Source: Mytilus californianus (Eukaryota). From it: 64,000 nucleotides of DNA. Both the position numbers and the translations under genes were made by a program. The notes under the pieces were generated by a model. It was not told the DNA's origin. It was given only the letters and a program-made list of their open reading frames with translations, and did not search any database. Positions 22,746-44,052 of the stretch are shown here, one piece after another (position 1 is the stretch's first letter; every line of letters begins with the position of its first letter). The DNA lies in contig NW_026262668.1 in the NCBI RefSeq assembly GCF_021869535.1, positions 67,394,001-67,458,000 on the forward strand, written 5' to 3'.

Positions 22746-24485
22746 GTAACAATTAATTGCCTGAAATAACTGATATGTTTTAATAACCTTTTAAAAATAG
22801 TCAGTTTCTCTCTAATGTATTGTCAAAAATTATAGCTATAGTGTTAAGGAAAGTTCAATAGACGAAGACAGCTTATATGGAAAATGATGACGATAATGCT
22901 CACGCTGAGACCAGTTCAACTATTATACATAAAATATAATACAAAAGGTACAAGCAATTGTGAATGCTATTGCAACGTATATGTATACCCATTCCATTTT
23001 AATTTTAATAATGTTGCTTGTGAAATGCAATGCAGCAAAAACCCGTTCAAAAAAGTATTTCAGCCTATTTCGTTTCGAATTGAATCAATACATTCACAGT
23101 TGGAATATACACACTTAACTTCCCTCTTTCATACCCTATGATAATATCGCTTGACGTATTTATTTAGAAGCGTTATGGTAATAAAACATTTGAATGGTTT
23201 ATTTATTGAATATTGAGCTTAATTACCCGTTTTATCAATGTATTACTGTAGCTATAGGTAAATCAAAATATTTATTTCAGTTGATGGTGTTTACTAGGTG
23301 ATACTTTCTTTACGTTGATAGATTGATTTTTAGGCACTTTCTAAAGACGTTTGAAAACTGAATGAATTATCTATATTTTCCAATATTTATTTAATATAAA
23401 ATGGAATTAAAGTCTTTCCAAACCATTTTTAAGACCCAAATAAAAATCTGCTAGTCTATACAAAGTGTTACTATTAATTTGAAACGTTAAAACTTTTAGG
23501 ACAAATTTCCACTGAATATTTTACAACTGAGATATTGTTAAAAGGTTTTCAATATTTTGTATAATTCTACAGTATAACAGTTTGATGTGTGTACTTTGAT
23601 GTTTTAACAGCATTACGTTGTTATTTGAATAGCTCAGACCAAATAAGAACTTTCATATAAATTATAAGCAACTTTATATACTTGAAAATTAAAAAAAAAA
23701 TAGATACATAATAAACAGAAAATTAGTTTTGCACATCATGATCATGGATGGCAAATAATACAATTAAGATACTTAAAATCCTTACAAAATATTTTCTGTT
23801 AAAAATCTAAGTCTTTTATACAGTAGATGAGAAATATTTGATGTACTATTTCACTGTTATACACATACTTTTAAAGAACAATATTTTGAAGATTCCAGAA
23901 ACACTCTCACAATTTCATGGCGTATGATTTCTCAGGGAAGTCATACTTTGATAAGACAATATTTTCATTGTGAAATACTATCATGGACAGAGAATCACAG
24001 TGAAATATTGTCCAAAAGCAGTTGACAAAACTTAATGGAGAAGGACACTATTTCACAAAGAAATATTGTATGCGGACAAGATTGTATATGAAATGTTTCA
24101 AAATTTCATGGAGGACATTATTTCATGTTACACAGTTACATTTTGTACATTTATGAAATAAAGAAACACCAGGGTATGGAACAGCAGGTTCTTCAAATGT
24201 CCAACCAGTTTTATAGGTCATATGTTTTTGGTTTTTAAAGAAAAAAAATAGTGGTCAACAGAACTCAAAGTAGTGTTCCAAATTTGTATTAAATTAGCTT
24301 TGTATTATCTATTTTATGACTGAAAATAAAGTAAAGCATAAATCTATAAATATTTTATTTATATTTTTGCTACCCATAATAAAAGGAATATATACAAGTT
24401 TATTTATTATTTATTTCTTAGATCAAATGGTTCGATTTCTTTTTAGTTATAAATGTAACAGATAACGCTCGTTCTGTACTCTCAT

Positions 24486-24767
24486 TCATTCTTTAATCAT
24501 AGTATTGAATTGTTCAGCATTCCAGTTCATTCTTGTTCTAACTCCAATTATGCCGAGTTCTTGTGCATTCTTATATTGCTGATGATTCAAATATTCTACA
24601 CCGACATCTTTCCATTTTCCTGCTTTCATCAGATTCGCCGTCTTTGGACCAAGATCGCCTCTGTATATTGCACTTATGACTGCAGACTTGACATTTGCTG
24701 GTAAGGAATCATATACGCTGTCTCCAAGTCTCGTTTTGGCTCTATTCACGTGCTCGGTTATGTCATG
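24486..24767 (-). CDS. Terminal exon of phage-type (GH24/T4-like) lysozyme gene
   Basis: AG acceptor at 24769-24768, phase 0; HDITEHVNRAKTRLGDSVYDSLPANVKSAVISAIYRGDLGPKTANLMKAGKWKDVGVEYLNHQQYKNAQELGIIGVRTRMNWNAEQFNTMIKE*; resembles the GH24 C-terminal lobe (Y..LP..v..A, G.W...a.E, G...R); AATAAA on - at 24404-24399. Confidence 0.78.
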   Translation of the reverse strand, partial: HDITEHVNRAKTRLGDSVYDSLPANVKSAVISAIYRGDLGPKTANLMKAGKWKDVGVEYLNHQQYKNAQELGIIGVRTRMNWNAEQFNTMIKE

Positions 24768-25452
24768 CTTTATTATAATAAAAGAGACAAAATCATCTTA
24801 ATTATCAAATTTAATTGACTTACTTGTTTCGTAAGCTTTTTTACCTTGGGGAACATGGTCCCAAAAATAGACTTCGATGGATAAGCCTACTTAAGAGCAA
24901 TTTCAAACTGCCCTCCAATGAAATGCTATTTGTCGAAAGCAAATTTCTATCCAAGTAAGCCAATTAGTTAGGAACATCCTCCTCCGTAGGTATATTAGTT
25001 TGTCAATAAAATCAATTTCATTTAGAATTAACATTTTGAGTGAGATTATTCTGACTGGAAATATATTTAAACATTACTTGACTGACGTGTTTATAGAGAT
25101 ATAAAACATTTTCAAATGTGACTCCAGATTCAAACATAATCTAAATTGATTATCATACGCATTTTTTAATTTCATGTATTGCATTTCAAATCGGATATAC
25201 TATGTTTTATTCGTGCACGGAACTAGAAATGTCTTGTTTCCACTGAAATAGTACTCCATCCAATCGTTTTGTTTGAAATAATAATAAATTTTCTTTACAA
25301 ATGTTTTAGTTTCAAAATTATCTGCCTGTTTCTGCCGTAAAAATATAGGTTCAGGTAATCTAAATTTCTATCATTAAGTCCAAAAGCATTATCATTAGGC
25401 TACCTCATCAACAAAAAATTAGTTCAGACTGGTGACTTATGATTATACTTAC

Positions 25453-25583
25453 ATTAAATAGCTTACGAGCTTGTTCCTTTGTTATGTTTTGTTGTCCCGT
25501 CTTAACCTTGTCAAAATCAACCTCTGGGACAAGTTTTTGGAACGTTGCTTTTGCATCAGATCTGTTCAAGTTGAACCCATAAC
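25453..25583 (-). CDS. Internal exon of phage-type lysozyme gene
   Basis: TTTTAG| acceptor, |GTAAGT donor, 131 nt (phase 1 to 0); (G)YGFNLNRSDAKATFQKLVPEVDFDKVKTGQQNITKEQARKLFN; GYGFNL and IT.EQA..LF are GH24 hallmarks. Absent from the ORF track. Confidence 0.8.
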
Positions 25584-26604
25584 CTAAAATTTTAATACCA
25601 AGAAGTTAACCTAATTTGCCGTAAATTTTTTTTATTAACGTTTAAACGGAGATAATGTTACGCATATTTAGCTGTTTGCAATTTTTTGGAATTGAATTTG
25701 ATAACCCTTTTCACCTTGTTATGTTCATTATGTTTTGTCTTGCATCACTGTCGGTTTTCTGCATTGAATGGGGTTATTTTTCATCTAGTTATAATGATGA
25801 CTAGACTCAAGCTGGCAGCCACTTTTAGCAGCCAATCAAGATAGCAGCCACTTTTTTCCAGCAGCCAATTTTGATGATATGTCTAAAAACCCAAAAACTA
25901 TATCAGACTCGAACGTTCTAAAAATCTCAAAATCTAAGTTAAATGTAATTTAAGAGCGGATTTCGACAATTTCACGGCTTGTAGTGATTCTCAAAGGATT
26001 TTTTCGTTTTAAATACCAATAATGATAGCAGCCACTTTTTTTCGAAATTCTAGCTACGATATATGTATTATTTTTTAACGTCTTAATGACCACAGATGTT
26101 CAGCCTTAGAAGTGAACGTCGAACAAACCAACACAAATGACGTCAGTAACTAGAAGCACTCACTAGGTTGATTTCTAGATCCGGCATATTGGTGTCAATG
26201 TGTATAGAAATATCTAGTTTCTACATAACTAATATATGTGCAGTTAGCCGCCGGTTCGATATTCTATATCCAACTAGCTGTGAGCAGTCGGTTCAATATT
26301 CAAACTTATTTGAAAATCATAAAAAATTGAGAGTTAAGAGGAGTGAAAAAAATACGTAGGAAATCGTTTTATGACCCCTTCAAGCTGTCGTAAATTCTCG
26401 TTGTCCTCGAATATAATCCCTTATGTAAGTTGCATAATTGTCTTTATGTAAAAATATAGTTTTTATCAATAAAACAACATTAAAGATGTATTTTATATAC
26501 AATATTTCTTAAAACAATAGAAACGCTAGAAACATTAAAAAAATATCAATAGAAATATTTATGGAAAGCCCCCACCTGTCCTAAAAAATGTATAGTAAAA
26601 ACCT

Positions 26605-29600
26605 ACCAACTTTGACCCCAACAATTTCCGAATGGGCCTAACTCCCAAAAATTCATTTCAGTGTGGCCTTTCCCAAGTTATTACCTTTCATTTGAGCCAT
26701 GTCCGGCGGCGAACTTTACCGTACAGCGCTGGCGAGGCTTACCGAAAGAATGTAGGATGTATACATATTTTTTTCCTTAGCAGCAACTTTGAACCCCAAC
26801 AATTTCCGAATGGGCCTAACTCCCAAAAATTCATTTCAGTGTGGCCTTCCCCAAGTTAATACCTTTTCTTTGAGCCATGTCCGGTGGCGAACTTTACCGT
26901 ACAGCGCTGGCGAGGCTTACCGAAAGAATGTAGGGTGTATACATATTTTTTTCCTTAGCAGCAACTTTGAACCCCAACAATTTCCAAATGGGCCTAACTC
27001 CAAAAAATTCATTTCAATGTGGCCTTCCCCAAGTTATTACCTTTCATTTGAGCCATGTCCGGTGGCGAACTTTACCGTACAGCGCTGGCGAGGCTTACCG
27101 AAAGAATGTAGGGTGTATACATAATTTTTTCCTTAGCAGCAACTTTGAACCCCAACAATTTCCGATTGGGCCTAACTCCCAAAAATTCATTTCAGTGTGG
27201 CCTTCCCCAAGTTATTACCTTTCATTTGAGCCATGTCCGGTGGCGAACTTTACCGTCCAGCGCTGGCGAGGCTTACCGAAAGAATGTAGGGTGTATACAT
27301 ATTTTTTTCCTTAGCAGCAACTTTGAACCCCAACAATTTCCGAATGGGCCTAACTCCCAAAAATTTATTTCAGTGTGGCCTTCCCCCAGTTATTACCTTT
27401 CATTTGAGCCATGTCCGGCGGCGAACTTTACCGTACAGCGCTGGCGAGGCTTACCGAAAGAATGTAGGGTGTATACATATTTTTTTCCTTAGCAGCAACT
27501 TTGAACCCCAACAATTTCCAAATGGGCCTAACTCCCAAATATTCATTTCAGTGTGGCCTTCCCCAAGTTATTACCTTTCATTTGAGTCATGTCCGGTGGC
27601 GAATTTTACCGTACAGCGCTGGCGAGGCTTACCGAAAGAATGTAGGGTGTATACATAATATTTTCCTTAGCAGCAACTTTGAACCCCAACAATTTCCGAA
27701 TGGGCCTTACTCCCAAAAATGTATTTCAGTGTGGCCTTCCCCAAGTTATTACCTTTCATTTGAGCCATGTCCGGTGGCGAACTTTACCGTACAGCGCTGG
27801 CGAGGCTTACCGAAAGAATGTAGGGTGTATACATATTTTTTTCCTTAGCAGAAACTTTGAACCCAAACAATTTCCGAATGGGCCTAATTCCCAAAAATGT
27901 ATTTCAGTGTGGCCTTCCCCAAGTTATTACCTTTCATTTGAGCCATGTCCGGCGGCGAACTTTACCGTACAGCGCTGGCGAGGCTTACCGAAAGAATGTA
28001 GGGTGTATACATATTTTTTTCCTTAGCAGCAACTTTGAACCCCAACAGTTTCCGAATGGGCCTAACTCCCAAAAATTCATTTTAGTGTGGCCTTCCCCAA
28101 GTTATTACCTTTCATTTGAGCCGTGTCCGGTGGCGAATTTTACCGTACAGCGCTGGCGAGGCTTACCGAAAGAATGTAGGGTGTATACATATTTTTTTCC
28201 TTAGCAGAAACTTTGAACCCAAACAATTTCCGAATGGGCCTGACTCCCAAAAATTAATTTCAGTGTGGCCTTCCCCAAGTTATTACCTTTCATTTGAGCC
28301 ATGTCCAGTGGCAAACTTTACCGTACAGCGCTGGCGAGGCTTACCGAAAGAATGTAGGGTGTATACATATTTTTTTCCTTAGCAGCAACTTTGAATTCCA
28401 ACAATTTCCGAATGGGCCTAACTCCCAAAAATTCATTTCAGTGTGGCCTTCCCCATGTTATTACCTTTCATTTGAGCCATGTCCGGTGGCGAACTTTACC
28501 GTACAGCGCTGGCGAGGCTTACCGAAAGAACGTAGGGTGTATACATATTTTTTTCCTTAGCAGCAACTTTGAACCCCAACTATTTCCAAATGGGCCTAAC
28601 TCCCAAATATTCATTTCAGTGTGGCCTTCCCCAAGTTATGACCTTTCATTTGAGCCATGTCCGGTGGCGAACTTTACCGTACCGCGCTGGCGAGGCTTAC
28701 CGAAAGAATGTAGGGTGTATACATATTTTTTTCCTAAGCAGCAACTTTGAACCCCAACAATTTCCGAATGGGCCTAACTCCCCGAAATTTATTTCAGTGT
28801 GGCCTTCCCCAAGTTATTACCTTTCATTTGAGCCATGTCCGGTGGCGAACTTTACCGTACAGCGCTGGCGAGGCTTACCGAAAGAATGTAGGGTGTATAC
28901 ATATTTTTTTCCTTAGCAGCAACTTTGAACCCCAACAATTTCCGAATGGGCCTAACTCCCAAAAATACATTTCAGTGTGGCCTTCCCCAAGTTATTACCT
29001 TTCATTTGAGCCATGTCCGGTTGCGAACTTTACCGTACAGCGCTGGCGAGGCTTACCGAAAGAATGTAGGGTGTATACATATTTTTTTCCTTAGCAGCAA
29101 CTTTGAACCCCAACAATTTCCGAATGGGCCTAACTCCCAAAAATTAATTTCAGTGTGGCCTTCCCCAAGTTATTACCTTTCATTTGAGCAATGTCTGGCG
29201 GCGAACTTTACCGTACAGCGCTGGCGAGGCTTACCGAAAGAATGTAGGGTGTATACATATTTTTTTCCTTAGCAGCAACTTTGAACCCCAACAATTTCCG
29301 AATGGGCCTATCTCCCAAAAATTCATTTCAGTGTGGCCTTCCCCAAGTTATTACCTTTCATTTGAGCCATGTCCGGTGGCGAACTTTACCGTACAGCGCT
29401 GGCGAGGCTTACCGAAAGAATGTAGGGTGTATACATATTTGTTTCCTTAGCAGCAACTTTGAACCCCAACAATTTCCGAATTGGCCTAACTCCCAAAAAT
29501 TCATTTTAGTGTGGCCTTCCCCAAGTTATTACCTTTCATTTGAGCCATGTCCGGTGGCGAATTTTACCGTACAGCGCTGGCGAGGCTTACCGAAAGAATG

Positions 29601-30895
29601 TAGGGTGTATACATATTTTTTTCCTTAGCAGAAACTTTGAACCCAAACAATTTCCGAATGGGCCTGACTCCCAAAAATTCATTTCAGTGTGGCCTTCCCC
29701 AAGTTATTACCTTTCATTTGAGCCATGTCCAGTGGCAAACTTTACCGTACAGCGCTGGCGAGGCTTACCGAATGAATGTAGGGTGTATACATATTTTTTT
29801 CCTTAGCAGCAACTTTGAATTCCAACAATTTCCGAATGGGCCTAACTCCCAAAAATTCATTTCAGTGTGGCCTTCCCCAAGTTATTACCTTTCATTTGAG
29901 CCATGTCGGGCGGCGAACTTTACCGTACAGCGCTGGCGAGGCTTACCGAAAGAATGTAGGGTGTATACATATTTTTTTCCTTAGCAGCAACTTTGAACCC
30001 CAACAGTTTCCGAATGGGCCTAACTCCCAAAAATTCATTTCAGTGTGGCCTTCCCCAAGTTATTACCTTTCATTTGAGCCATGTCCGGTGGCGAACTTTA
30101 CCGTACAGCGCTGGCGAGGCTTACCGAAAGAACGTAGGGTGTATACATATTTTTTTCCTTAGCAGCAACTTTGAACCCCAACTATTTCCAAATGGGCCTA
30201 ACTCCCAAATATTCATTTCAGTGTGGCCTTCCCCAAGTTATGACCTTTCATTTGAGCCATGTCCGGTGGCGAACTTTACCGTACCGCGCTGGCGAGGCTT
30301 ACCGAAAGAATGTAGGGTGTATACATATTTTTTTCCTTAGCAGCAACTTTGAACCCCAACAATTTCCGAATGGGCCTAACTCCCCAAAATTTATTTCAGT
30401 GTGGCCTTCCCCAAGTTATTACCTTTCATTTGAGCCATGTCCGGTGGCGAACTTTACCGTACAGCGCTGGCGAGCCTTACCGAAAGAATGTAGGGTGTAT
30501 ACATATTTTTTTCCTTAGCAGCAACTTTGAACCCCAACAATTTCCGAATGGGCGTAACTCCCAAAAATTAATTTCAGTGTGGCCTTCCCCAAGTTATTAC
30601 CTTTCATTTGAGCCATGTCTGGCGGCGAACTTTACCGTACAGCGCTGGCGAGGCTTACCGAAAGAATGTAGGGTGTATACATATTTGTTTCCTTAGCAGC
30701 AACTTTGAACCCCAACAATTTCCGAATTGGCCTAACTCCCAAAAATTCATTTCAGTGTGGCCTTCCCCAAGTTATTACCTTTCATTTGAGCCATGTCCGG
30801 TGGCGAACTTTACCGTACAGCGCTGGCGAGGCTTACCGAAAGAATGTAGGGTGTATACGTATTTTCTTCTTCTTAAAAGTAACTGTGAACCCCAA
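26605..30895 (+). repeat. 178-bp tandem satellite array, about 24 copies (left arm)
   Basis: Repeat ORF starts recur at exact 178-bp steps from 26789 to 30705; monomers differ only by substitutions; last monomer degenerate. Confidence 0.97.
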
Positions 30896-30909
30896 GACAC
30901 AATTGAACA

Positions 30910-31146
30910 GTTATGTACGGGAAAAGTCGCAACAGGACATGTCACAATTGAAAGGTCATACATCAGAGCAAGGTGCAAGGAAATATACGTTTGGGGGTTA
31001 GAACCTTCTGGGAATTGAGGTTCAAAGTTGCTGTTTAATTATTTGTTTACGTGTCTACCGTTCATTATTTAGGAAATCCTCAAAAGGAAATAAATGATAC
31101 GAAATCAGTACAGATCAAATGAATTCTTTTTCGGGGGTTAGAACCT
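30910..31146 (-). repeat. Decayed inverted 178-bp monomers marking the foldback axis
   Basis: TGTACGGGAAAAGTCGCAACAGGACATG, TTTGGGGGTTAGAACC, GAGGTTCAAAGTTGCTG and AAATGAATTCTTTTTCGGGGTTAGAACC align in order with the right-arm monomer. Confidence 0.7.
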
Positions 31147-32816
31147 GAAACTACTGTAAAAAGGCGACCGACAGAAGAACTGTTACAAGATGTTGCTGAA
31201 CTGAAATCTGTAACGAAGCTTATCAAAACAAATCAAAAGACATTATCTGATCTTAATGAAAAGACAATCGAAATTATTGAACAACAAGAAGAAATCGACG
31301 AAGACATTAAAGAAGTTGACAGATACGAGTTAGAGATACAGATTGCTATCACGAAAATTGAGAAGTACTCCAAGAAGTACGTCTGTCAAAAATCAATCCG
31401 CATTAAACACTCAAGCACCATATTTCATATATACACTAACCCAAGCGTAAAAGAACATACAAATCCGATAAATTTCAACTCAAAACAAACGAGCGTAAGC
31501 CAATCAGACATGTCAAATCATGACAACAAATTGCCTAAACCCAACCTACCCACTTTTGGCGGAAATGTACTAGAATTGTCAACCTTATGGGATACATATT
31601 ATTCTGTCGTACATGAAAATCCTTCATTGAGTGGCGTACAAATATTGCACTATCGGAAACTGCAACTTTACGGAGAAACTATCCACTGTATATCGGGAAT
31701 GCAAATTACAAGTACAAATTATAACCAAGCAATACATACTCTACACGAGAGAATTGGCCAACAACACAAAATTGTACACGCATATACATGCAAAACTTGC
31801 TAAATTTGCCGGCACCATATCACAGAATTAAAGGACTAAAATTGTTAAGTGACACGATAGAAAGTTATAAACGTGAACTATGAGGAATTGCCGATATCAA
31901 GAATAGTACGGATGCCAATTGATACCAATAATACTGAAAAAAATTCCATGTTTGGTCAGAAAAAAACATTACTCAAGTCACGGTGATGATGATATCTCAA
32001 GATTACACAAAGCAGTAAAGAAAGAAATTTGTATACGAGAGGCCACTAATGCCAATCCTATTGAAACCGACATTATCTCAACAGCATTGTTGGTAACAGG
32101 AAATCAAACACAAGATGAAGGTCAACATGGTCTAAAGAAAGTTTCGACAATAGTACATTTCAGACTGTGTTTTCCAAATGAATTTAAAGTCACTAATATT
32201 AAGGCCCGCACAAAAATCTTCAAGGAATAAAATTAAAAGTTTCGATAATTATAAGGTTTCGGAATGTAAGTTACAATATAGCTTCCGATAAGTAAGACAC
32301 GTCATACCAGCATTTGCCGTAATAATTTACAAAATAGAAATTCCACTTCGAATGAAGATAAAACCTAATCAAACCTAACATAACCGGCGAATGGAGATTT
32401 TCTAAGTACAGAAACAAAGAGCATCGCTATTCATTCTGCTCTAACAGCACCTACCAAAGACTATCAAAATTTGCCGTAGCGCCCGAGTGATACCATGACG
32501 AAAGTGGTTTGACTAACATATCATACTTGAATAAAGGCACACAAAACTCATTTATTTCACAATAAGTGGTGAAATGGTATAGTAAGTAATCCAATTTCTG
32601 CATTTCTTCAGGAAAGAAGATTAGGTATGCAACCTGGAGAAAGCGACAATATCAGTTGAGATCGAAAGAAAAGAAGGAATTCCAATAGAATTAATAATTA
32701 TTCCAAAAACTGCCCTACCAATACATTTGAAGAAACGTGTAAATATCAACAACTTGACCTATTTACGAGGATTACAATTTTACCACCAAGTCACAAGCGA
32801 AAAAAAGTACAATATA
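31146..32816 (+). mobile_element. Degenerate BEL/Pao gag-protease fragment
   Basis: DUF1759-type motif KLPKPNLPTFGGNVLE...WD; frameshifted gag; protease-like region near 32520-32560; many stops. Confidence 0.75.
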
Positions 32817-32987
32817 TCTTGCTTTTCCTTTAATGTATCAAGAATTGTTTCTAACTCGTCCTATTCCGGTTTTTCTTCTGATTCACTCTTCTCGTCAAAT
32901 CTTCTTAAAATCATAGAAACTGCGCTTCTGTGTCCCGCTCAAATAGATTTAAGCTTTGTAGTCATCTTCTTCTGGTCACGGTACCAA
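32817..32987 (-). mobile_element. Second PBS plus gag start directly after the 3' LTR (truncated tandem copy)
   Basis: TGGTACCGTGACCAGAAGAAGATGACTACAAAG duplicates 35488-35320. Confidence 0.75.
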
Positions 32988-35664
32988 TATCGTAAAGTGG
33001 TTTTACTAAAACTGCATTTGTAATAAGAAAGACGTCTAAACTGTATGAATTTGTATTGATAACTAAAGAACAAGATAACGTCATAAGTTAACGACGTTGG
33101 ATATACAATACTGCCGCATTACGTTCACGTTTTCTTCTGCGCGTGATTTCCAACATTCTCCGGCTGATGAAAAGTGAAAATTCTTAAATTTAGAAAATAA
33201 TCAAAGTCTCTCCCTTTAAATAAATAACATGAAATTACCTTTAAAGTCAATCAGTAACTTTAAAACGTTTACCACAGTTTTTTATAGTACGGTGTCACAT
33301 TTATTTCACTTTCTTTTTTTCTGGTAAGTTTCTCCCTGTAATCCAATTCCTGATATAACGTAAGCTGTTTGAACGGAGATTTTGATATTCTCATGCCTTG
33401 TACATCATCGTAAAAGTATTTGTTTTGGTTAGTGTCTCTTGTCCACATTAAATCTGATTTGTCTGTTTCATTTACTGTCAACGGACCAGTGGTTCTTTGT
33501 TTTGTCCTTGAAGTGTCCATAATTCTAGAAATATGTTCAATGTTAATAGTATTCCTCTCTGTTTTATCCTCGGTATTGTGCGTCTCTTTTTTTTCTCCTA
33601 AATTTGTAGCACGAGAGTGTGCTTTGTTGATTGAACTGGTTCTTTTGAGTGGTCCTGAGAGCAGGTATCTTAGTTTGGACTTTACTGCTGTTTGCCCCTC
33701 GCCCCTTACGATTTCATCCTCGACCATATCCCAGAATTGGTCAGCTCTTACAAGCAGTCCAATTTCAAATGATGTATCCTCAGTTACAGCGTGTGCTAAT
33801 CTTAAGTTTTGCAAATACGGCAACTGTTTTTGCATTTTCAATATCAGCCTTAAATGGTGCGGCGATTTTCTGTACAATCAAAACATCGACTGGTATTTCT
33901 TAGCCATAGATAGTTTGTATCTTCACTGTTGCTTTTTTTAGCTGTTCAATAGAGTTGTTCTCATTATTGTCTCCAAATCTAGATAGGGTAATTGCTTCAC
34001 TTCCTGTGGTTCTTAACTCCTTTTCTCTGCTAAATGTCTTGTATACGTAATAAATGACCTTGTGCCGATTCGTCAAAAAGGATCTTTGCATCAATCGATT
34101 GTTCTTTGTAGTTTAGTGGTGCTATTGCGGTCTTCAACAAAACATTAGGGCGATCACAGTTTAAAGATGAATAAAATTGTATCAGCTTCCTCCGCGTTGT
34201 GTGTTTTTACTGTATATGTACTACTTGAACTTAAAGTTTCCTTATCATGTTCTTTGCTGCATAGGCTTGTGTGGTGACGTCTATTACATTTCTTGCAGTT
34301 TGATTTAGATTTGCAATATATTACGCGGTGTCGCCTTAAGCAATTAAAGCACAATCTATCTTCTTTCACAATTTTCATGCGGTCGATGTGGTCTGTATAT
34401 TTGGTACATTCAGACGAAAAGTGGGGTTCCTTGCAGTATGCGCAGCTTATTTGATAATATTTCTGTGGTGAATTGGCATTTGGCCAGATTTCGCGCGATT
34501 TTGAGTCTGTGTAGAAAGTACATGTAGCTGTTTCAAATGTTTCTGTACTTCTACCAGACTCTAAAATTGCTAGCTCCTTAAAAATAGATCTCCTAAGATC
34601 ACCGATAAACCAATCCGTCGAACCATGTTCACGAGTCAAGTGTTTGCGTATTTCACTGGGCATTTTGTTGAGAATGACTGGTACTAATAACGAGCCGTAC
34701 AAGTCTTGAGCTTGTTCGAGAGATTCTAGTCCACGTATGTCTGTTTCTGTCCTGTCTTAGTAACCTCTTAGATGTGTAAGCATATTCTTTGGTGTGGGTA
34801 TGTCTAGTAGTGCTTGCATGTACGATTGAATTATCTTATGCTTTTGTTCGAATCTTTCATGTATAAGTCCAATAGCTTTGTTGTAGTTTGTGTGCGTTAG
34901 AGCAAATCCGGCAATGGTGTATGACGCTTCTCCTTTTAGTAAAGAATTTAGGTAGTTGAATTTTTGAACGACGGTTAGTGTGTTGTTGTTGTGAATTGCT
35001 GAATCAAATGAATCCCAAAAAAATTGCCATTCAAGTACGTTTCCATCAAATGTAGGTAAGTTCAATTTCGGTAGTTTAGTAAAGTTGCTGATATTAACAC
35101 TTGAATTTGAACGTAAAGACGTGAAGTTGAGGCCAGTATTTTGAGAGTCATCTCTAACGTTATATGCGGGGCCAACATTTTGAATGGGTTGCAGTGTCTC
35201 ACTGTGTGGCAAAAACTTCTAGCGGCTGCATTTAAATCAGATGTTTGAACGTGAATGAATTTACGAAGAATTTTGCGTATTCTCGTCTCTAAGTTAAATT
35301 TATAATCATCTGTGTCAAGTTTGCTTTTCCTTTAATGTATCAAGAATTGTTTCCAACTCGTCCTCTTCCGGTTTTTCTTCTGATTCACTCTTCTCGTATA
35401 CTCTTCTTAAAATTATTGAAACTACGCTTCTGTGTCCCGCTCGAATAGATTTAAGCTTTGTAGTCATCTTCTTCTGGTCACAGTACCAATATCGTAAAGT
35501 GGTTTTACTAAAACTGCATTTGTAATAAGAAAGAGGTCTAAACTGTATGAATTTGTATTGATGATTGAAGTACAAGATAACGTCATAAGTTTACGACGTT
35601 GGATATACAAATTACAATAATGCCACGTTACGTTAACGTTCTCTTCTCTGCGTGATTTCCAACA
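32988..35664 (-). mobile_element. Compact BEL/Pao LTR element: LTR-PBS-gag-protease-LTR, no RT/RNase H/integrase
   Basis: Two direct repeats of about 170 bp starting TGTTGGAAATCACGC (35664 and 33155); PBS TGGTAC(T/C)GTGACCAG (tRNA-His-like) at 35488; ATG 35467; DUF1759; three Cys-His knuckles (CAYC..H..C, CFNC..H..C, CKKC..HH..C); protease ILFDES; purine tract GCCGGAGAA before the 3' LTR; ORF frameshifted. Confidence 0.85.
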
Positions 35665-35669
35665 ATATC

Positions 35670-35870
35670 ACTACTTATTGGAGCAGATTACTGGTCTTTA
35701 GTATGAGATGAAATTATTCAAGGTGACGGACCAACAGCGGAATCCAGCAGATTAACTCACTCGAGGACTGACTGCGGAACAGTTTTTCAGAACTCACTCT
35801 GGGTTAACGGACCCGAATGGCTAACGGATAAGGAAAAGGGCCGACATGAATGTAAACGCTCACAGATAGT
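35670..35870 (+). mobile_element. BEL/Pao pol fragment (RNase H/integrase linker)
   Basis: Frameshifted NPAD..TRG...W.NGPEWL motif. Confidence 0.7.
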
Positions 35871-35888
35871 ACCGTATTATCATCATTC

Positions 35889-38115
35889 GTTGGGGTTCAA
35901 AGTTGCTGCTAAGGAAAAAAATATGTATACACCCTACATTCTTTCGGTAAGCCTCGCCAGCGCTGTACGGTAAAATTCGCCACCGGACATTGCTCAAATG
36001 AAAGGTAATAACTTGGGGAAGGCCACACTGAAATGCATTTTTGGGAGTTAGACCCATTCGGAAATTGTTGGGGTTCAAAGTTGCTGCTAATGAAAGAAAT
36101 ATGTATACACCCTACATTCTTTCGGTAAGCCTCGCCAGCGCTGTACGGTAAAGTTCGCAACCGGACATGGCTCAAATGAAAGGTAATAACTTGGGGAAGG
36201 CCACACTGAAATGAATTTTTGGGAATTAGGCCCATTCGGAAATTGTTGGGGTTCAAAGTTGCTGCTAAGGAAAAAAATATGTATACATCCTACATTCTTT
36301 CGGTAAGCCTCGCCAGCGCTGTACGGTAAAGTTCGCCACCGGACATGGCTCAAATGAAAGGTAATAACTTGGGGAAGGCCACACTGAAATGAATTTTTGG
36401 GAGTTAGACCCATTCGGAAATTGTTGGGGTTCAAAGTTGCTGCTAAGGAAAAAAATATGTATACATCCTACATTCTTTCGGTAAGCCTCGCCAGCGCTGT
36501 ACGGTAAAGTTCGCCACCGGACATGGCTCAAATGAAAGGTAATAACTTGGGGAAGGCCACACTGAAATGAATTTTTGGGAGTTAGACCCATTCGGAAATT
36601 GTTGGGGTTCAAAGTTGCTGCTAAGGAAAAAAATATGTATACACCCTACATTCTTTCGGTAAGCCTCGCCAGCGCTGTACAGTAAAGTTCGCCACTGGAC
36701 ATGGCTCAAATGAAAGGTAATAACTTGGGGAAGGCCACACTGAAATGAATTTTTGGGAGTTAGGCCCATTTGGAAATTGTTGGGGTTCAAAGTTGCTGCT
36801 AAGGAATAAAATATGTATACACCCTACATTCTTTCGGTAAGCCTCGCCAGCGCTGTACGGTAAAATTCCCCACTGGACATGGCTCAAATCAAAGGAAATA
36901 ACTTGGGGAAGGCCACACTGAAATGAATTTTTGGGAGTTAGACCCATTCGGAAATTGTTGGGGTTCAAAGTTGCTGCTAAGGAAAAAAATATGTATACAC
37001 CCTACATTCTTTCGGTAAGCCTTGCCAGCGCTGTACGGTAAAGTTCGCCACCGGACATGGCTCAAATGAAAGGTAATAACTTGGGGAAGGCCACACTGAA
37101 ATGAATTTTTGGGAGTTAGGCCCATTCGGAAATTGTTGGGGTTCAAAGTTGCTGCTAAGGAAAAAAATATGTATACACCCTACATTCTTTCGGTAAGCCT
37201 CGCCAGCGCTGTACGGTAAAGTTCGCCACTGGTTATGGCTCAAATGAAAGGTAATAACTTGGGGAAGGCCACACTGAAATGAATTTTTGGGAGTTAGGCC
37301 CATTCGGAAATTGTTGGGGTTCAAAGTTGCTGCTAAGGAATAAAATATGTATACACCCTACATTCTTTCGGTAAGCCTCGCCAGCGCTGTACGGTAAAAT
37401 TCGCCACTGGACATGGCTCAAATGAAAGGTAATAACTTGGGGAAGGCCACACTGAAATGAATTTTTGGGAGTTAGACCCATTCGGAAATTGTTGGGGTTC
37501 AAAGTTGCTGCTAAGGAAAAAAATATGTATACACCCTACATTCTTTCGGTAAGCCTCGCCAGCGCTGTACGGTAAAGTTCGCCACCGGACATGGCTCAAA
37601 TGAAAGGTAATAACTTGGGGAAGGCCACACTGAAATGAATTTTTGGGAGTTAGGCCCATTCGGAAATTGTTGGGGTTCAAAGTTGCTGCTAAGGAATAAA
37701 ATATGTATACACCCTACATTCTTTCGGTAAGCCTCGCCAGCGCTGTACGGTAAAGTTCGCCACTGGACATGGCTCAAATGAAAGGTAATAACTTGGGGAA
37801 GGCCACACTGAAATGAATATTTGGGAGTTAGACCCATTCGGAAATTGTTGGGGTTCAAAGTTGCTGCTAAGGAATAAAATATGTATACACCCTACATTCT
37901 TTCGGTAAGCCTCGTCAGCGCTGTACGGTAAAGTTCGCCACCGGACATGGCTCAAATGAAAGGTAATAACTTGGGGAAGGCCACACTGAAATGAATTTTT
38001 GGGAGTTAGGCCCATTCGGAAATTGTTGGGGTTCAACGTTGCTGCTAAGGAAAAAAATATGTATACACCCTACATTCTTTCGGTAAGCCTCGCCAGCGCT
38101 GTACGGTAAAGTTCG
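35889..38115 (-). repeat. 178-bp tandem satellite array, about 12.5 copies (right arm, inverted)
   Basis: Reverse complement of the left-arm monomer; ORF starts at exact 178-bp steps from 38036 to 36078. Confidence 0.97.
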
Positions 38116-39506
38116 CCACTGGACAGGTGGGGGCTTTCCATAAATATTTCTATTGATATTTTTTAAATGTTTCTAGCGTTAAGGTTATATTTCTATTGTT
38201 TTAAGAAATATTGTATATAAAATACATCTTTAATGTTGTTTTATTGATAAAAACTATATTTTACATAAAGACAATTATGCAACTTACATAAGGGATTATA
38301 TTCGAGGACAACGAGAATTTACGACAGCTTGAAGGGGTCATAAAACGATTTCCTATGTATTTTACCACTCCTCTTAACTCTCAATTTTTTATGATTTTCA
38401 AATAAGTTTGAATATTGAACCGACTGCTCACAGCTAGTTGGATATAGAATATCGAACCGGCGGCTAACTGCACATATATTAGTTATGTAGAAACTAGATA
38501 TTTCTATACACATTGACACCAATATGCCGGATCTAGAAATCAACCTAATGAGTGCTTCTAGTTACTGACGTCATTTGTGTTGGTTTGTTCAACGTTCACT
38601 TCTAAGGCTGAACATCTGTGGTCATTTAGACGTTAGAAAATAATACATATATCGTATTGGTAGCTAGAATCATTATGGTATTTAAAACGAAAAAATCCTT
38701 TGAGAATCACTTCAAGCCGTGAAATTGTCGAATTCCGCTCTCAAATTACATTTAACTTAGATTTTGAGATTTTTAGAACGTTCGAGTCTGTTATAGTTTT
38801 TGGGTTTTTAGACATATCGTCAAAATTGGCTGCTGGAAAAAAGTGGCTGCTATCTTGATTGGCTGCTAAAAGTGGCTGCCAGCTTGAGTCTAGTATAATG
38901 ATGCCTTCATTCCAGTTTCCGAGGCAAGGACTATCAGTGGAATTCGACGAGACATCAAAAGCAAACACCCTTTGCACTGTTACGGGCTATAACATCACTC
39001 TAGTGAAACGTACTCTTTTGAGGATTATTTCGATCTTGTGTAAAAGTAAGGACTAGGTGCATGGCGCGAAAGATGTAAAAATATATTTCGTCTGAAATTT
39101 AGTCCAACAATGTTATATGTGCGGTATAAACTATTTGTCATTTCCTCAGCGGGGTTTGAACTCATTTTTCTGTGACATATCGATAATTCTTCCTGCAATG
39201 ATTCGCAAGGACGACCGTTTGAGACAGGGGGAACGATTAATATTTGCCAGTTTTATTCTCAAGCTGTTCGTTCTATTAAAGGTCGGTTTCATAAATATTT
39301 TGTATTAACTATGTATTTTTTGCGATGAGGCAAATATATTCATACATTTAATCACATATTAAACGATTTGTGTATACTTATTTCACATACAAGTGCAGGT
39401 TTTTTTTTCATTTTCTAGATACCGTACATTCTATTATATGTAGCCTGGCATCCTTTTCGCATCAGACGAGCAGTGAGTCAGGATCCAAAGCTATATTATA
39501 TATTAC

Positions 39507-39608
39507 CTATCGTTGTGTCATGAACTGAAGGGTTTTGGGGTTGTGCATCGTAAGCCTTGAGGTTAGGTTCTCCATTTGTTTCAAACTTAATGATTACGTC
39601 AGTTATAT
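39507..39608 (-). CDS. Upstream exon of phage-type lysozyme gene (catalytic Glu region)
   Basis: TTTGTAG| acceptor, |GTAATA donor, 102 nt (phase 1/1); (D)ITDVIIKFETNGEPNLKAYDAQPQNPSVHDTTI(G); splices in frame to 25583 and rebuilds TTIG-YGFNL across the intron. Confidence 0.78.
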
Positions 39609-39676
39609 CTACAAAGATAATGTATGTGTTACAAATCAAATTTAAAGTAGAAAACTTTTTATATATATATATCATG

Positions 39677-40824
39677 CACAATCATTAGACACTCTACTCT
39701 TAAGCAAGTGTTTAGTGCCGGACAGGAGAAGTCTAGAAATGACCATATTAATACTTTTCATGTATACTCTGGATTCAAGTTGACGATTAAATGTTCATTC
39801 CTCTGAAATAGAAAATGATTTGAAAATTTGCGGCAACAAAATGGCGAAGACGTTCATAGTGCAAGACTCTGGTCCATGTTTTTTAACTAATGATATTCCT
39901 AGACATGTATAGAGGTTCAAGCTTCGCTCTCACCCCATATGGAATTTACTGACCCCATATATATTGTATTAGGTCACTACCACACTATGTAACTAACAAA
40001 ACATGCATGACAAATTTCTTGTCAGTTCAAAACGTATTTGTTTGAACAACGTCATGTCAATCTAAGTGAACATTTTCCCCTTTTGGAATCTAACATATTA
40101 TTTCAGCTGTTATCCCCCAGACATTGCCATATGTTCAGATATAATCAATCTTTAAAATGCACATCTTCATTAATTTTCAGACAAGCAGCAAAGCAGATGT
40201 CGCGTGCACTGAAACGGGTATTATACGTTCATATTACTACATGTAACTATTATGATTTACAGTTGAGTCATCAAAGGTTTAATCTGCCCATAAGCCATGA
40301 ATGCAATTTGTTTTGGTACCGGCATAATTTGAATAACTCATTTTAACTCTAATTCTTTAGTCTGAATTATGTTGTTGTGCTTAAAACTATTACTTCTGGC
40401 AAAGTGGATGAGACAATATTTATTTCTGTGTTGGTTTTTTTAGGAGGGGATAGATAAAATGCTCCTGAATGATTGAATGATTTTGGCTTTTGAAACTATA
40501 TTCTTGAATGTCCTTGGTGAAGGTTCTTCCGAAAAAGAATGTGTCATGCAAACCGAAACCGGCAATGTATGTACGTTTATATATTTAACATGTTTGGTTC
40601 AAAAACTTGGTCCAGAGTCTTGCACTATGAACGTCTTCGTCATTTTGTTGCCGAAAATTTTCAAATCATTTTGTATTTCAGAGGAATGATATTTAATCGT
40701 CAATTTGAATCCAGAGTATAATTCCTTTGACAAGAATTTACATGAGGAGTATTAATATGATCATTTCTAGACTTCTCCTGTCCGGCACTAAACACTTGCT
40801 AGAGTAGAGCGTCTATTGTTAGTG
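39677..40824. mobile_element. MITE-like element with TIRs of about 210 bp, in a lysozyme intron
   Basis: 39677-39885 is the reverse complement of about 40610-40824 (e.g. GCAAGTGTTTAGTGCCGGACAGGAGAAGTCTAGAAATGA); CAC...GTG ends; no clear TSD. Confidence 0.8.
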
Positions 40825-40834
40825 CAGTATGTAT

Positions 40835-41105
40835 AAATTCACAGCCATGTCAGATCGGAATGTAGACGTTTAATTCGATGCCCCATTAAAGCTTTTAGCC
40901 ATTCACGTCAAATAACCCATGCAAAAAACTCTGAGGTCCTAGACAAAATGTCTAGCAACATATCTTCATTTTTCTGCGACAGTCCAAATTTCACACCTTT
41001 CTTCCTAGTCGACTCACCTTGCAGAATCAACCTATTATGTTATTGGTTAATTTGTTTTCCTCCACAATATGAATGAAATATTTGCAGCTGGACATTAAAC
41101 AAGCA
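40835..41105 (+). mobile_element. Degenerate SINE-like copy
   Basis: GTCAGATCGGAATGTAGACGTTTAATTCGATGCC core and CTGGACATTAAACAAGC tail. Confidence 0.4.
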
Positions 41106-42094
41106 ACAAAGAATCGATTTTTGTCGGTATTGATTCATTGCATTAAGAATGTCTACAAAGAATGCTTTCCTTACATTATTTCTTCAAAGTTATATTATAA
41201 AATCAGTAATGTTGTATGATTGCCAATGAGACAAGTTCGACAACTAACCACCAGAGACCAAATGACGTAGATGTTAGCAACTATAGGTTACCGTATAGCC
41301 TCCAACAATGAGCAAAACCCATACCACACAGCAAGCTTTAAATCGAGAAAACCAACGCTGTCTGTGATTCTTTCTTTTTTTTTTTGTAAAATGTTCCATG
41401 AGGTTGCAAAAATCCGAAGATTAATTCTGTTTATAAATGCAAGTGCATTTATGATCAAATACAATCAAAGAAAGACAAGTCAATTATTCTTGATTATGGT
41501 ATCGCCGAGTGTGGCAGATTTTTGGATCAAGTGAAAATCGAAACATCATTTCTTCTTTTTTAAAATCTTCTTATTTAACAGTGGTCCTTAAAGAACGGAA
41601 CTTTAAATGGTGCAACAGCTCATTCAAAGGGGTGGTACAGCGTTATTTTCGTGTGTTTTGTTGATCGATCAACTTATTTACAAATATCCTTTATTTGACG
41701 TTTACTCATGCACTAGAGATTCAACGTTAATTTTTCGGCCATCTTTAATCAAACAGATCATAATTAAAAGGTTGGAATGACAGAAATGCTTAAAAAATCA
41801 TCAAATTATTGGAAATAAATGACAATGTACCAGAACACTATTTTGGTGGCTTGTTAAAGAATTGTTATTGATTTTCTTGAATATGATAAAAGATTGTCAG
41901 TTAAGAACTGAGAAAGAGAAGTCACAAAACTGTTTTTAACACTAAAGACTTCTGTTTCGTGCAAAGATCGTAAAATTCATTTGTAGTTTACGTTTAAATT
42001 ACGTGCACGTACCATCCTCTTTAAAGCGGTAGGTATGCATGTGTGCTCTGTATAAGCATCCTTTTGAAGAGCACTACCATGATATATGATTTTA

Positions 42095-44052
42095 AGGAAA
42101 ATATGTATATTTCCAACTATGTACTGGCTTCCGAAGCTGCATAAAACTCCATACAAATATAGATTTATTTCGTCTTCAAGCCATTGTTCCGCTACTAAAC
42201 TATCTATTCTACTTACTAGTACACTTGGTACAATCAAAAACCTGGTAATAAATTGTTCAAATAAGGCCTTTGAAAATAGTGGAATTAATTACTTTTGGAG
42301 TGTCAAAAATTCGTTGGAAGTACTTGATAAGTTGCATGCTTATATTGGTGATTTCGAATCTGTTCAAAGTTTTGATTTTTCTACCCTATATACCACGTTG
42401 CCTCATAATCTTATTAAGAAAAAAATCACACACCTGATTAAATGGGCATTTAAAAAGTCGGAATGCGAATATATATGTTCAAACTCTTATAGGTCATTTT
42501 TTAGTAACAACAAACAAAAGAACTATGTCAATTGGACCTGCTTTGATACTATAACTGCCCTTGAGTTTTTACTAGATAACATTTTTGTTCGCTATGGAGA
42601 TTCCGTATATCGTCAGGTTATCGGAATTCCCATGGGGACTAACTGTGCACCACTTATTGCGGACCTGTTTCTGTATTGTTATAAGTTACAATTTATGACT
42701 AAAATCAGCAAAGACCCATCGAAACAACACCTGATTCAAAAATTTAATAACACTTTTAGATATTTAGATGATATATTGACTCTCAATAATGACGACTTCA
42801 GTGTGTACACTAAAGAGATTTATCCTGCCGAACTGACTTTAAATAAAGCTAATACTAACAAAGAACACTGCCCTTTCCTGGATCTTGATATCTTTATCTT
42901 TAACGGGAAGCTTAATACCAAAATTTATGATAAAAGAGATGATTTTTCATTTCCTATTGTTAATTATCCATTTTTAGATGGTGACGTTCCCTTGTCGCAA
43001 TCTTCTGGTGTTTATATATCTCAACTTGTTCGATTCGCTCGTGTATGTAACAACGTATTTGATTTCAACGAAAGAAATCTCTGTATTACTGAAAAATTAT
43101 TACACCAGGGTTTTCGATATCACAAACTAGTCAAAACATTTACTAAATTTTATCATCGGTACAGGGACATCATTCGTAAATATAAACCAACATGCAGACA
43201 TCTTATACGTTCAGGTATTTCACATCCAATATTTTATGGTAATATTCTTTACAAGGCACAAAAATGTCGGCATTCACCTCAAAAGCTTACCAAACCTTTA
43301 AACAGACTTATTCGGAAAGGATATAGTTACGATACTGTTGTCAAGTCATTAAGGATTACATATTTTGGTATTAATATTGATTCACTCATAGGGTCTTTGC
43401 ATCGGAAATAAACACATTTATTCTAAAACAAGTTGTTGGCATGATACGGGTTATGTTCTTCTCATATATTTTATGATGGTATGATACTAAACCCCTAACG
43501 GGAGGGATTGTACTTGATTTTCATATGATGAAGACATAATCTTTTAATCAGTTTAATTGAGGTCTGGAGCTGGCATGTCAGTAACTGCTAGTAGTCCTTT
43601 GTTCATTTATGTATCATTGTCATTTTGCTTAGTTTCTTTTGTTACCTATTCTGACATCGGACTCGGACTTCTTTTAAACTGAGTTTTACTGTGCGTATTG
43701 CTATGTGCTTCTGTATTCTACATTGGCTAGAGGTATAGGGAGAGGGTTGAGATCTCACAAAACATGTTTAACCCCGACGCATTTTTGCGCCTGTCCCAAG
43801 TCAGGAGCCTCTGGCCTTTGTTAGTCTAGTATATTTTTTAATTTTAGTTCATTAATATGTTTTGGAGTTTAGTGTGACGTCCATTTTCACTGAACTAACA
43901 CACAATTTTATTTAGGGGCCAGCTGAGGACCACCTCCGGGTGCGGGATTTTCTCGCTGCATTGAAGACCCATTGGTGGCCTTCGGCTGTTGTCTGCTCTT
44001 TGGTCGGGTTGTTGTCTATTTGACATATTCCCCATTTCCATTCTCAATTTTA
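42095..44052 (+). mobile_element. 5'-truncated Penelope-like retroelement (RT ORF plus 3' UTR)
   Basis: Open RT frame followed by a repeat 3' end of about 640 bp finishing CCCCATTTCCATTCTCAATTTTATT; boundaries approximate. Confidence 0.8.
42119..43411 (+). CDS. Penelope-like reverse transcriptase (uninterrupted, no C-terminal GIY-YIG)
   Basis: YWLPKLHK, RFISSS, DFSTLYTTLPH, GIPMGTNCAPLIADLFLY, FRYLDD, CPFLDL, IYDKRDDF motifs. Confidence 0.88.
   Translation: MYWLPKLHKTPYKYRFISSSSHCSATKLSILLTSTLGTIKNLVINCSNKAFENSGINYFWSVKNSLEVLDKLHAYIGDFESVQSFDFSTLYTTLPHNLIKKKITHLIKWAFKKSECEYICSNSYRSFFSNNKQKNYVNWTCFDTITALEFLLDNIFVRYGDSVYRQVIGIPMGTNCAPLIADLFLYCYKLQFMTKISKDPSKQHLIQKFNNTFRYLDDILTLNNDDFSVYTKEIYPAELTLNKANTNKEHCPFLDLDIFIFNGKLNTKIYDKRDDFSFPIVNYPFLDGDVPLSQSSGVYISQLVRFARVCNNVFDFNERNLCITEKLLHQGFRYHKLVKTFTKFYHRYRDIIRKYKPTCRHLIRSGISHPIFYGNILYKAQKCRHSPQKLTKPLNRLIRKGYSYDTVVKSLRITYFGINIDSLIGSLHRK

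What the first reader, a model, noticed from the sequence alone, without database searches (positions are those of the whole stretch)
24486..39608. Hidden intron-containing phage-type (GH24/T4-like) lysozyme gene spanning 15 kb
Seen: three minus-strand exons with GT-AG ends and matching phases give about 171 aa: DITDVIIKFE-TNGEPNLKAYD-AQPQNPSVHDTTIG|YGFNL...ITKEQARKLFN|HD...YRG...GKW...EYLN...GVRTRM. The TTIG-YGFNL motif only appears once a 13.9-kb intron is removed. Known: E...Y.D...TIGYG is the GH24 active-site signature, typical of phages and bacteria, and phage-type lysozymes have been reported in some bivalves as probable horizontal acquisitions. Inferred: a domesticated, intronised antibacterial muramidase.
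Basis: partly seen in the sequence, partly recalled or inferred. Interest (0 to 1): 0.85.

Follow-up and report, generated by a model that had tools for sequence, protein, structure and literature searches.

The report
Mussel phage-type (GH24) lysozyme gene
This is a real, expressed and conserved mussel gene for a phage T4-like lysozyme, split by very long introns. It is a new mussel member of the known "bivalve co-opted phage lysozyme" family, and its relatives suggest that family is older and wider in animals than published.

Summary
The three minus-strand exons exist exactly as described, but they are the last three of five coding exons. The CDS runs from 53671 to 24486 (29.2 kb) and encodes 193 aa. 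That protein is identical to RefSeq XP_052091350.1, "uncharacterized protein LOC127728146" of Mytilus californianus, so the gene is annotated but unnamed, not hidden.

RNA-seq shows both claimed junctions: 25453/24767 as a direct joint, and 39507/25583 through 23 reads that continue into exon C.

The protein just passes Pfam PF00959 (22.7 bits against a cut-off of 22.3). A profile of the family hits T4 lysozyme at E 5.5e-18. The AlphaFold model (pLDDT 94.9) superposes on T4 lysozyme at Z 14. Counterparts of the catalytic Glu and Thr lie in the exon upstream of the 13.9-kb intron. dN/dS against the M. trossulus orthologue is 0.11.

This is a new member of the known bivalve phage-lysozyme (BCPL) family, in a subclass where it was thought absent. 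Unlike most relatives it has no signal peptide. Muramidase activity is inferred, not tested.

Beyond the finding: two intron positions are shared with a clam, a chiton and an annelid, and the animal sequences form one clade. This points to one transfer older than published.

The scan had already noted the 13-kb satellite-armed insertion in the intron (s1-337777).

The parts
53662..53671 (-). Coding part of exon A: ATG (53671-53669) plus 7 nt, followed by the donor GTAAGT. The 5' limit of the exon was not determined. A possible acceptor 'ttttcag' ends near 53695.
   Evidence: Joining it to exons B-E gives a protein identical to P0172 / XP_052091350.1.
53047..53103 (-). Exon B (57 nt), an N-terminal linker of sequence QSNPHYIAAAKANIPNPN. 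It ends in phase 1 (g|gtaaga). It is homologous to the NPNYIPYKEK linker of the Mytilus paralogues.
   Evidence: tblastn of the M. trossulus orthologue, sequence, alignment A2.
39609..53046 (-). Intron B-C, 13.4 kb. It holds a + strand nested gene (about 44697-49928), a 441-aa retroelement-like ORF (42086-43411) and a MITE-like inverted repeat (about 39700-39900 / 40660-40860).
39507..39608 (-). Exon C (102 nt, in-frame length). It encodes the catalytic lobe: E32 (counterpart of T4L E11), D43 and D53 (candidate counterparts of D20) and T55 (counterpart of T26). It ends in phase 1 inside the G57 codon.
   Evidence: 23 RNA reads continue from exon D into 39510-39539.
25584..39506 (-). Intron C-D, 13.9 kb. 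It is inflated by inverted 178-bp satellite arrays (26607-30895 and 35889-38125) around a core that holds a BEL/Pao gag-like ORF (34757-35212). The same intron is 1.6 kb in M. trossulus.
25453..25583 (-). Exon D (131 nt), running from YGFNLNR to KLFN. It ends in phase 0.
   Evidence: RNA depth is about 26x in X23 and the joint to exon E is seen.
24768..25452 (-). Intron D-E, 685 nt, GT..AG.
   Evidence: The joint 24767/25453 is seen in 16 reads (13 starts) of X23, 9 reads of X24, and contigs of X10 and X12.
24486..24767 (-). Exon E coding part (93 codons plus TGA), the C-terminal helical lobe with the subfamily signature YRGDLGPKT...EYLNH.
24385..24485 (-). 3' UTR (approximate), with overlapping AATAAA signals at 24399-24415.
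   Evidence: Sequence. RNA depth falls from about 26x to about 1x between bins 24442-24498 and 24328-24384.

Best explanation
The window carries LOC127728146 of Mytilus californianus. It is a five-coding-exon, 29.2-kb, minus-strand gene for a 193-aa T4-type (GH24) lysozyme. Shown: the exon structure, transcription and splicing, the GH24 sequence and fold, purifying selection, and orthologues in four Mytilus species. Inferred: the protein hydrolyses the MurNAc-GlcNAc bond of bacterial peptidoglycan in the way T4 lysozyme does. In that scheme E32 is the acid, T55 and a nearby Asp (D53 or D43) position the water, and all of these residues sit in exon C. The gene descends from a phage or bacterial lysozyme taken up by an animal ancestor. 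It later gained spliceosomal introns, one of which in this species was inflated to 13.9 kb by a satellite-armed insertion. Because this orthologue has no signal peptide, it probably acts inside cells or is released non-classically. Whether it serves defence or digestion of bacteria is open.
For: The splice of five exons is identical to RefSeq XP_052091350.1, and the CDS range of 29,186 bp matches the NCBI gene call. In RNA, the joint 24767/25453 appears in four runs. 23 reads of X23 run from exon D into a 30-mer that is unique to 39510-39539. First mates lie only on the + strand, exon depth is 25-35x and intron depth is about 0. For family: PF00959 scores 22.7 bits against a cut-off of 22.3. 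phmmer's best solved-structure hits are T4 lysozyme, E 7e-5, with T55 on T26. A 106-sequence profile hits T4L at E 5.5e-18 over residues 3-145. The AF2 model has pLDDT 94.9 and pTM 0.89. All top Foldseek hits are T4L or T4L fusion constructs, with TM up to 0.69. VIA-align gives Z 14, rmsd 3.0 A over 146 residues. For constraint: dN/dS is 0.11 against M. trossulus (dS 0.37), and intron identity is 71%. All four variants seen in X23 RNA are synonymous. E, the D at T-2, and T-I are invariant in 13 animal homologues. For origin: exon E matches marine Vibrio and Alteromonas phage lysozyme domains, and close environmental relatives lie on a phage-like contig and a bacterial contig. Homologous bivalve enzymes are bacteriolytic in vitro (PMC5303276).
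Against: No enzyme assay exists for this protein. The Pfam score is only 0.4 bits above threshold. The loop between the conserved Tyr and T-I-G is 5 residues longer than in T4L, so the Asp20 counterpart is uncertain. D43 is Asn in the Mytilus paralogues. There is no N-terminal hydrophobic segment (max KD(9) 0.99, against 2.4-3.5 in relatives), which is unexpected for an extracellular antibacterial enzyme. Exons A and B rest on identity to the RefSeq model and on the orthologues. I laid no RNA reads there.
Confidence: 0.85

Rival explanations
1. The gene keeps the T4-lysozyme fold but is no longer a muramidase. It would instead be, for example, a peptidoglycan-binding or sensor protein, or have some other intracellular role.
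For: There is no signal peptide. The loop before T-I-G is lengthened and the Asp20 counterpart is ambiguous. RefSeq isoforms X2 in M. edulis and M. galloprovincialis skip the catalytic exon in frame.
Against: The catalytic Glu, the Asp at T-2 and the Thr are invariant across 13 animal homologues. dN/dS is 0.11. A freshwater-mussel homologue is bacteriolytic (PMC5303276). Every loose-end read group reported at exon D's upstream edge continues into exon C.
Confidence: 0.1
2. It is a transcribed pseudogene or a decaying relic of a transferred gene.
For: The introns are very long and loaded with transposons. RefSeq gives it no functional name.
Against: The 193-codon frame is intact and 92% identical to orthologues in three other Mytilus species. 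dN/dS is 0.11. Splicing is clean and expression is solid.
Confidence: 0.02
3. It is phage or bacterial contamination, or a chance open frame assembled from unrelated pieces.
For: The best non-animal matches are marine phage and bacterial lysozymes.
Against: It has spliceosomal introns with GT-AG ends, confirmed in stranded RNA-seq. Mollusc repeats and a nested animal gene lie in its introns. The same locus, with the same nested gene, exists in M. trossulus.
Confidence: 0.01

Closest known systems
[quoted passage not shown] HcLyso1/2 of Hyriopsis cumingii and RpLyso1/2 of Ruditapes philippinarum (Ren et al. 2017, PMC5303276)
   Same: Both are GH24 phage-type lysozymes encoded in bivalve nuclear genomes, intron-bearing, duplicated, sometimes fused to other N-terminal modules, and expressed. 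The window's protein is 66% identical to the Mercenaria (venerid clam) copies over 155 aa and shares all three intron positions with one of them.
   Different: This one is in Pteriomorphia (Mytilus), the subclass in which that paper found none (it checked only C. gigas). It has no signal peptide. One intron is inflated to 13.9 kb.
Phage T4 lysozyme (gene e product, GH24, Pfam PF00959)
   Same: Same two-lobed fold (Z 14, 146 residues, 26% identity). Same Glu ... Tyr ... Thr-Ile-Gly-x-Gly active-site motif and the ITK(D/E)(E/Q)A.KLFN helix.
   Different: The loop before T-I-G is 5 residues longer and there is a 3-residue Mytilus insert after the Glu. It carries a 23-aa N-terminal extension and a distinct C-lobe signature, YRGDLGPKT...EYLNH, typical of a marine phage and bacterial subfamily. 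It is eukaryotic and spliced.
Marine phage and bacterial members of the same GH24 subfamily, e.g. Alteromonas phage vB_AspP-H4/4 gp39 putative endolysin (MF278336.1) and lysozyme domains of Vibrio N4-like phage virion proteins
   Same: They share the YRGDL...LNH...Y C-lobe signature. Identity over exon E is 34-38%.
   Different: These are single-ORF prokaryotic or viral genes, often with an N-terminal membrane anchor or fused to virion proteins. The animal sequences form their own clade.

Membership tests
GH24 / Pfam PF00959 Phage_lysozyme (T4-type) | Sequence score at or above Pfam's gathering threshold | tested here: met
   P0172 scores 22.7 bits against a cut-off of 22.3, E 1.3e-4. This is marginal. 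Single exons give nothing. Mercenaria homologues score 24.7-25 bits and a phage relative 39 bits.
GH24 / Pfam PF00959 Phage_lysozyme (T4-type) | Homology to T4 lysozyme detectable by profile | tested here: met
   Profile of alignment A1 against solved structures: T4L at E 5.5e-18, covering T4L 3-145. The single sequence gives E 7e-5.
GH24 / Pfam PF00959 Phage_lysozyme (T4-type) | T4-lysozyme fold | tested here: met
   AF2 pLDDT 94.9, pTM 0.89. Foldseek top hits are all T4L or T4L fusions, prob 1.0, TM 0.57-0.69. VIA-align Z 14.0, rmsd 3.0, 146 residues.
GH24 / Pfam PF00959 Phage_lysozyme (T4-type) | Catalytic Glu (T4L E11) and Thr (T4L T26) | tested here: met
   T55 aligns with T26. The family profile's Glu aligns with T4L E11, and that Glu (E32 here) is invariant in 13 animal homologues.
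GH24 / Pfam PF00959 Phage_lysozyme (T4-type) | Second carboxylate (T4L D20) | tested here: inconclusive
   There are two candidates. D43 sits at Tyr+1 and is Asn in the Mytilus paralogues. D53 sits two residues before the Thr and is invariant.
GH24 / Pfam PF00959 Phage_lysozyme (T4-type) | Muramidase activity on peptidoglycan | not testable with these tools
   Needs a recombinant enzyme assay.
BCPL genes (Ren et al. 2017) | GH24 gene resident in a bivalve nuclear genome, with introns, and transcribed | tested here: met
BCPL genes (Ren et al. 2017) | Groups with other bivalve GH24 sequences, apart from phage and bacterial ones | tested here: met
   All 22 animal rows lie on one side of a branch, support 96/90. 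Intron positions are shared with Mercenaria. Caveat: Ren's own sequences were not in the tree, and the root is not known.
BCPL genes (Ren et al. 2017) | Bacteriolytic activity and response to bacterial challenge | not tested
   Shown only for HcLyso1/2 in the paper.
Pesticin C-terminal muramidase (PF16754) | Match to PF16754 | tested here: not met
   This was a language-model lead for exon E. There is no PF16754 hit for P0172 even at E up to 10.

The most novel reading that the evidence does not exclude
The animal GH24 lysozymes are not a bivalve-specific acquisition made after Pteriomorphia split off, as published. They would descend from one transfer into an ancestor at least as old as the mollusc-annelid split, which then gained two introns that are still in place. 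The evidence is twofold. The phase-1 intron in the T-I-G codon and the phase-0 intron after L-F-x are shared by Mytilus, Mercenaria, the chiton Liolophura and the annelid Owenia. All sampled animal sequences, including an intron-less sponge copy, form one clade. Within this family, the Mytilus orthologue in the window would be a leaderless, possibly intracellular, derivative.
Probability: 0.55. Interest if true: 0.6.

Novelty: new member of a known kind. Interest (0 to 1): 0.45.

Why it matters
Phage-derived lysozymes in bivalves are a textbook-style case of an animal co-opting a weapon against bacteria. The published account restricts them to two bivalve subclasses and dates the transfer after mussels and oysters branched off. 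A conserved, expressed Mytilus gene contradicts that dating. So do the homologues with the same intron positions in a clam, a chiton and an annelid, which suggest a much older, repeatedly lost gene. Practically, the unnamed RefSeq loci in four Mytilus species can now be named as GH24 lysozymes. The leaderless form is a testable candidate for an unusual intracellular lysozyme in an aquaculture and sentinel species.

Tried and rejected
1. Single exons against Pfam and solved structures gave nothing. The family signal needs the spliced protein.
2. The Pesticin-like lead from the protein atlas was not borne out by Pfam.
3. A second copy in the window was sought by tblastn and not found.
4. An exact-protein look-up for transcript contigs found only the genome record.
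5. A profile search with full-length mollusc proteins was swamped by low-complexity N-termini and added only a few further chiton and Mytilus entries.
6. PHROGs matched only an unknown-function family with a 2087-position profile.
7. One literature search with too-loose terms returned nothing relevant. Targeted searches found only Ren et al. 2017 for animal GH24.
8. Contamination, chance ORF and pseudogene readings were rejected on the splicing, synteny and dN/dS evidence.
Full report
**Observation**

On the minus strand, 39608-39507, 25583-25453 and 24767-24486 are open in one continuous frame once joined. Their borders are GT...AG. An AG acceptor precedes 39608, and a Gly codon is split g|gt across the long intron. 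tblastn of that peptide against the window finds no second copy. The window has no N.

**The gene is larger than described**

An exhaustive HMMER search with exon E returned 325 relatives. The best were 200-310-aa proteins in which the T-I-G-x-G-F-N-L stretch is contiguous.

A word-based search and cluster look-ups named these as uncharacterized proteins of Mercenaria mercenaria and of four Mytilus species. Using the M. trossulus orthologue as a guide, I found two further coding exons in the window:
- exon B at 53103-53047;
- exon A, with ATG at 53671-53669 and a GTAAGT donor after 53662.

Joining all five pieces gives 582 nt and 193 aa. The product is identical, residue for residue, to P0172 = XP_052091350.1, [quoted passage not shown]. 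NCBI's gene range of 29,186 bp equals 24486-53671.

So the window is M. californianus.

**Transcription and splicing**

I laid reads on 24100-25780.
- A raw RNA-seq run labelled with the window's species (X23) gives 25-35x depth on exons D and E and about 0 in the intron.
- First mates lie only on the + strand, which in most stranded libraries means a minus-strand RNA.
- The joint 24767/25453 is carried by 16 reads with 13 starts in X23, by 9 reads of a second species' run (X24), and by transcript contigs of two further RNA runs.
- At exon D's upstream edge, 23 X23 reads continue into a 30-letter consensus whose only match in the window is 39510-39539, the end of exon C.

No alternative continuation was reported, so exon C is not detectably skipped in this sample. 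Exons A and B were not covered by my single read-laying run. They rest on identity to the RefSeq model and on the orthologues.

**What the protein is**

- P0172 scores 22.7 bits on PF00959 Phage_lysozyme, just above the 22.3-bit threshold.
- Its best matches among solved structures are T4 lysozymes (E 7e-5), with T55 on T26.
- A profile of 106 relatives hits T4 lysozyme at E 5.5e-18 over residues 3-145, including the E11 ... Y18 ... T26-I-G-I-G-H motif.
- An AlphaFold2 model built with that alignment has mean pLDDT 94.9 and pTM 0.89.
- All top Foldseek matches are T4 lysozyme or T4L fusion constructs.
- VIA-align gives Z 14.0, rmsd 3.0 A, 146 residues and 26% identity, spanning model residues 20-190 and T4L 1-156.

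In 13 animal homologues the Glu (E32 here), an Asp two residues before the Thr (D53), and T-I are invariant. The Asp20 counterpart is ambiguous because the loop is 5 residues longer than in T4L. D43 is Asn in the paralogues. All these residues are encoded by exon C.

The atlas lead to Pesticin-type muramidases was not confirmed.

**Is it functional?**

- Against the M. trossulus orthologue (locus L005; the CDS I rebuilt translates to P0155), dS is 0.37, dN is 0.039 and dN/dS is 0.11. Intron D-E is only about 71% identical.
- The four variants seen in X23 RNA are all synonymous.
- M. galloprovincialis, M. edulis and M. trossulus proteins are 92% identical to the window's.

**An unusual trait**

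The N-terminus (MSASQSNPHYIAAAKANIPNPN) has no hydrophobic core. Its maximum 9-residue Kyte-Doolittle mean in the first 60 residues is 0.99, and that value falls in the first lysozyme helix.

The M. trossulus paralogue P0182, four Mercenaria copies, the chiton, the annelid and the sponge score 2.4-3.5 and look like signal peptides. The paralogues also carry Ser/Arg/Trp-rich and Pro-Lys repeat linkers, which misled RefSeq into names such as "titin-like" or "SRRM1-like".

RefSeq isoforms X2 of M. edulis and M. galloprovincialis skip exon C in frame and would lack the active site.

**Origin and relatives**

Exon E alone matches lysozyme domains of marine Vibrio and Alteromonas phages at 33-38% identity. 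Close environmental relatives sit on a phage-like contig (many small co-oriented ORFs and a Mom domain) and on a bacterial chromosomal contig (AsnC-type regulator, DJ-1/PfpI, class I tRNA synthetase).

Ren et al. 2017 (PMC5303276) described GH24 "BCPL" genes in Heterodonta and Palaeoheterodonta. Their genes are intron-bearing, duplicated, sometimes fused, and bacteriolytic for HcLyso1. They found none in Crassostrea gigas and so dated the transfer after Pteriomorphia diverged. The searchable literature holds no report of GH24 in Mytilus or outside bivalves.

In contrast, I found the following.
- Mytilus is a pteriomorph and has at least two paralogue groups.
- Cluster names reveal homologues in the chiton Liolophura sinensis, the annelid Owenia fusiformis and the sponge Corticium candelabrum.
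- Mapping proteins onto their loci shows two introns in identical positions and phases in Mytilus, Mercenaria, Liolophura and Owenia. One is the phase-1 intron in the third codon of T-I-G (T-I-C in the chiton, T-V-G in Owenia). The other is the phase-0 intron after L-F-(N/R/K).
- The sponge domain is a single exon behind spliced upstream exons, between ordinary animal genes.
- In a careful IQ-TREE analysis of 43 rows, all 22 animal sequences lie on one side of a branch, with support 96/90. The 107-row quick tree agrees, with weaker support.

Caveats:
- the root is unknown;
- the non-animal rows are 50%-identity representatives chosen by similarity to exon E;
- some unnamed rows could themselves be animal;
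- the sponge branch is long;
- Ren's own sequences were not in the tree.

**Verdict**

The gene is a real, expressed, selectively constrained GH24 T4-type lysozyme of phage or bacterial ancestry, a new Mytilus member of a known kind. Muramidase activity and any immune or digestive role are inferred, not shown.

The extras worth following are the missing signal peptide, and the shared intron positions that point to a single transfer older than the mollusc-annelid split.

The 13.9-kb intron owes its size to a satellite-armed insertion already noted by the scan (s1-337777). I confirmed the two inverted 178-bp arrays. The orthologous M. trossulus intron is only 1.6 kb.

Noticed in passing
window 26607-30895 (+) and 35889-38125 (inverted), core 31000-35900: Two inverted arrays of a 178-bp satellite (24 and 12.6 copies, 95-97% matches) flank a core that holds a BEL/Pao gag-like ORF (DUF1759, E 2e-28, 34757-35212 minus). 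Together they make up most of intron C-D. The orthologous M. trossulus intron is only 1.6 kb, so the insertion is probably lineage-specific. Already noted by the scan as s1-337777.
   Followed up: partly
window about 44697-49928 (+), last exon ORF 49179-49928: A 308-aa gene is nested on the opposite strand inside intron B-C of the lysozyme gene. By language-model features it is thioesterase-like (4HBT_2 / Acyl-ACP_TE_C, mollusc-rich clusters, score 0.95), with a weak Pfam hit (18.3 bits, below cut-off). A 310-aa gene sits in the same intron in M. trossulus, so the nesting is conserved.
   Followed up: partly
window 42086-43411 (+): A 441-aa ATG-started ORF has no Pfam hit. Its atlas neighbours are animal retroelement proteins (HTH_animal / RVT_1-associated clusters, score 0.95-0.98). 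It is probably a retrotransposon fragment in intron B-C.
   Followed up: partly
window about 39700-39900 and 40660-40860: About 60-100 bp inverted copies (motif ...AGCAAGTGTTTAGTGCCGGACAGGAGAAGTCTAGAAATGA...) about 0.8 kb apart, just upstream of exon C. This is a MITE- or foldback-like insertion, seen by eye only.
   Followed up: no
P0173 and P0175 (RefSeq isoforms X2 of M. edulis and M. galloprovincialis): These 159-aa isoforms skip the 102-nt exon C in frame and so lack the catalytic Glu, Asp and Thr. No sign of this form appeared in the M. californianus RNA run laid here.
   Followed up: partly
L004 (Liolophura sinensis), L006 (Owenia fusiformis), L007 (Corticium candelabrum), P0046 (Mercenaria): GH24 homologues outside bivalves. 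The chiton copies are tandem, and each has a signal peptide and a Cys-rich N-terminal module. The annelid copy has a Cys-rich C-terminal module, and a Mercenaria paralogue has a Cys-rich N-terminal module. The sponge copy has an intron-less lysozyme domain. This looks like repeated module shuffling around one catalytic domain.
   Followed up: partly
P0152, P0153, P0157 (RefSeq names): Several paralogues are named 'titin-like', 'nucleolar protein dao-5-like' or 'serine/arginine repetitive matrix protein 1-like' because of their low-complexity linkers. These names hide the lysozyme domain.
   Followed up: no
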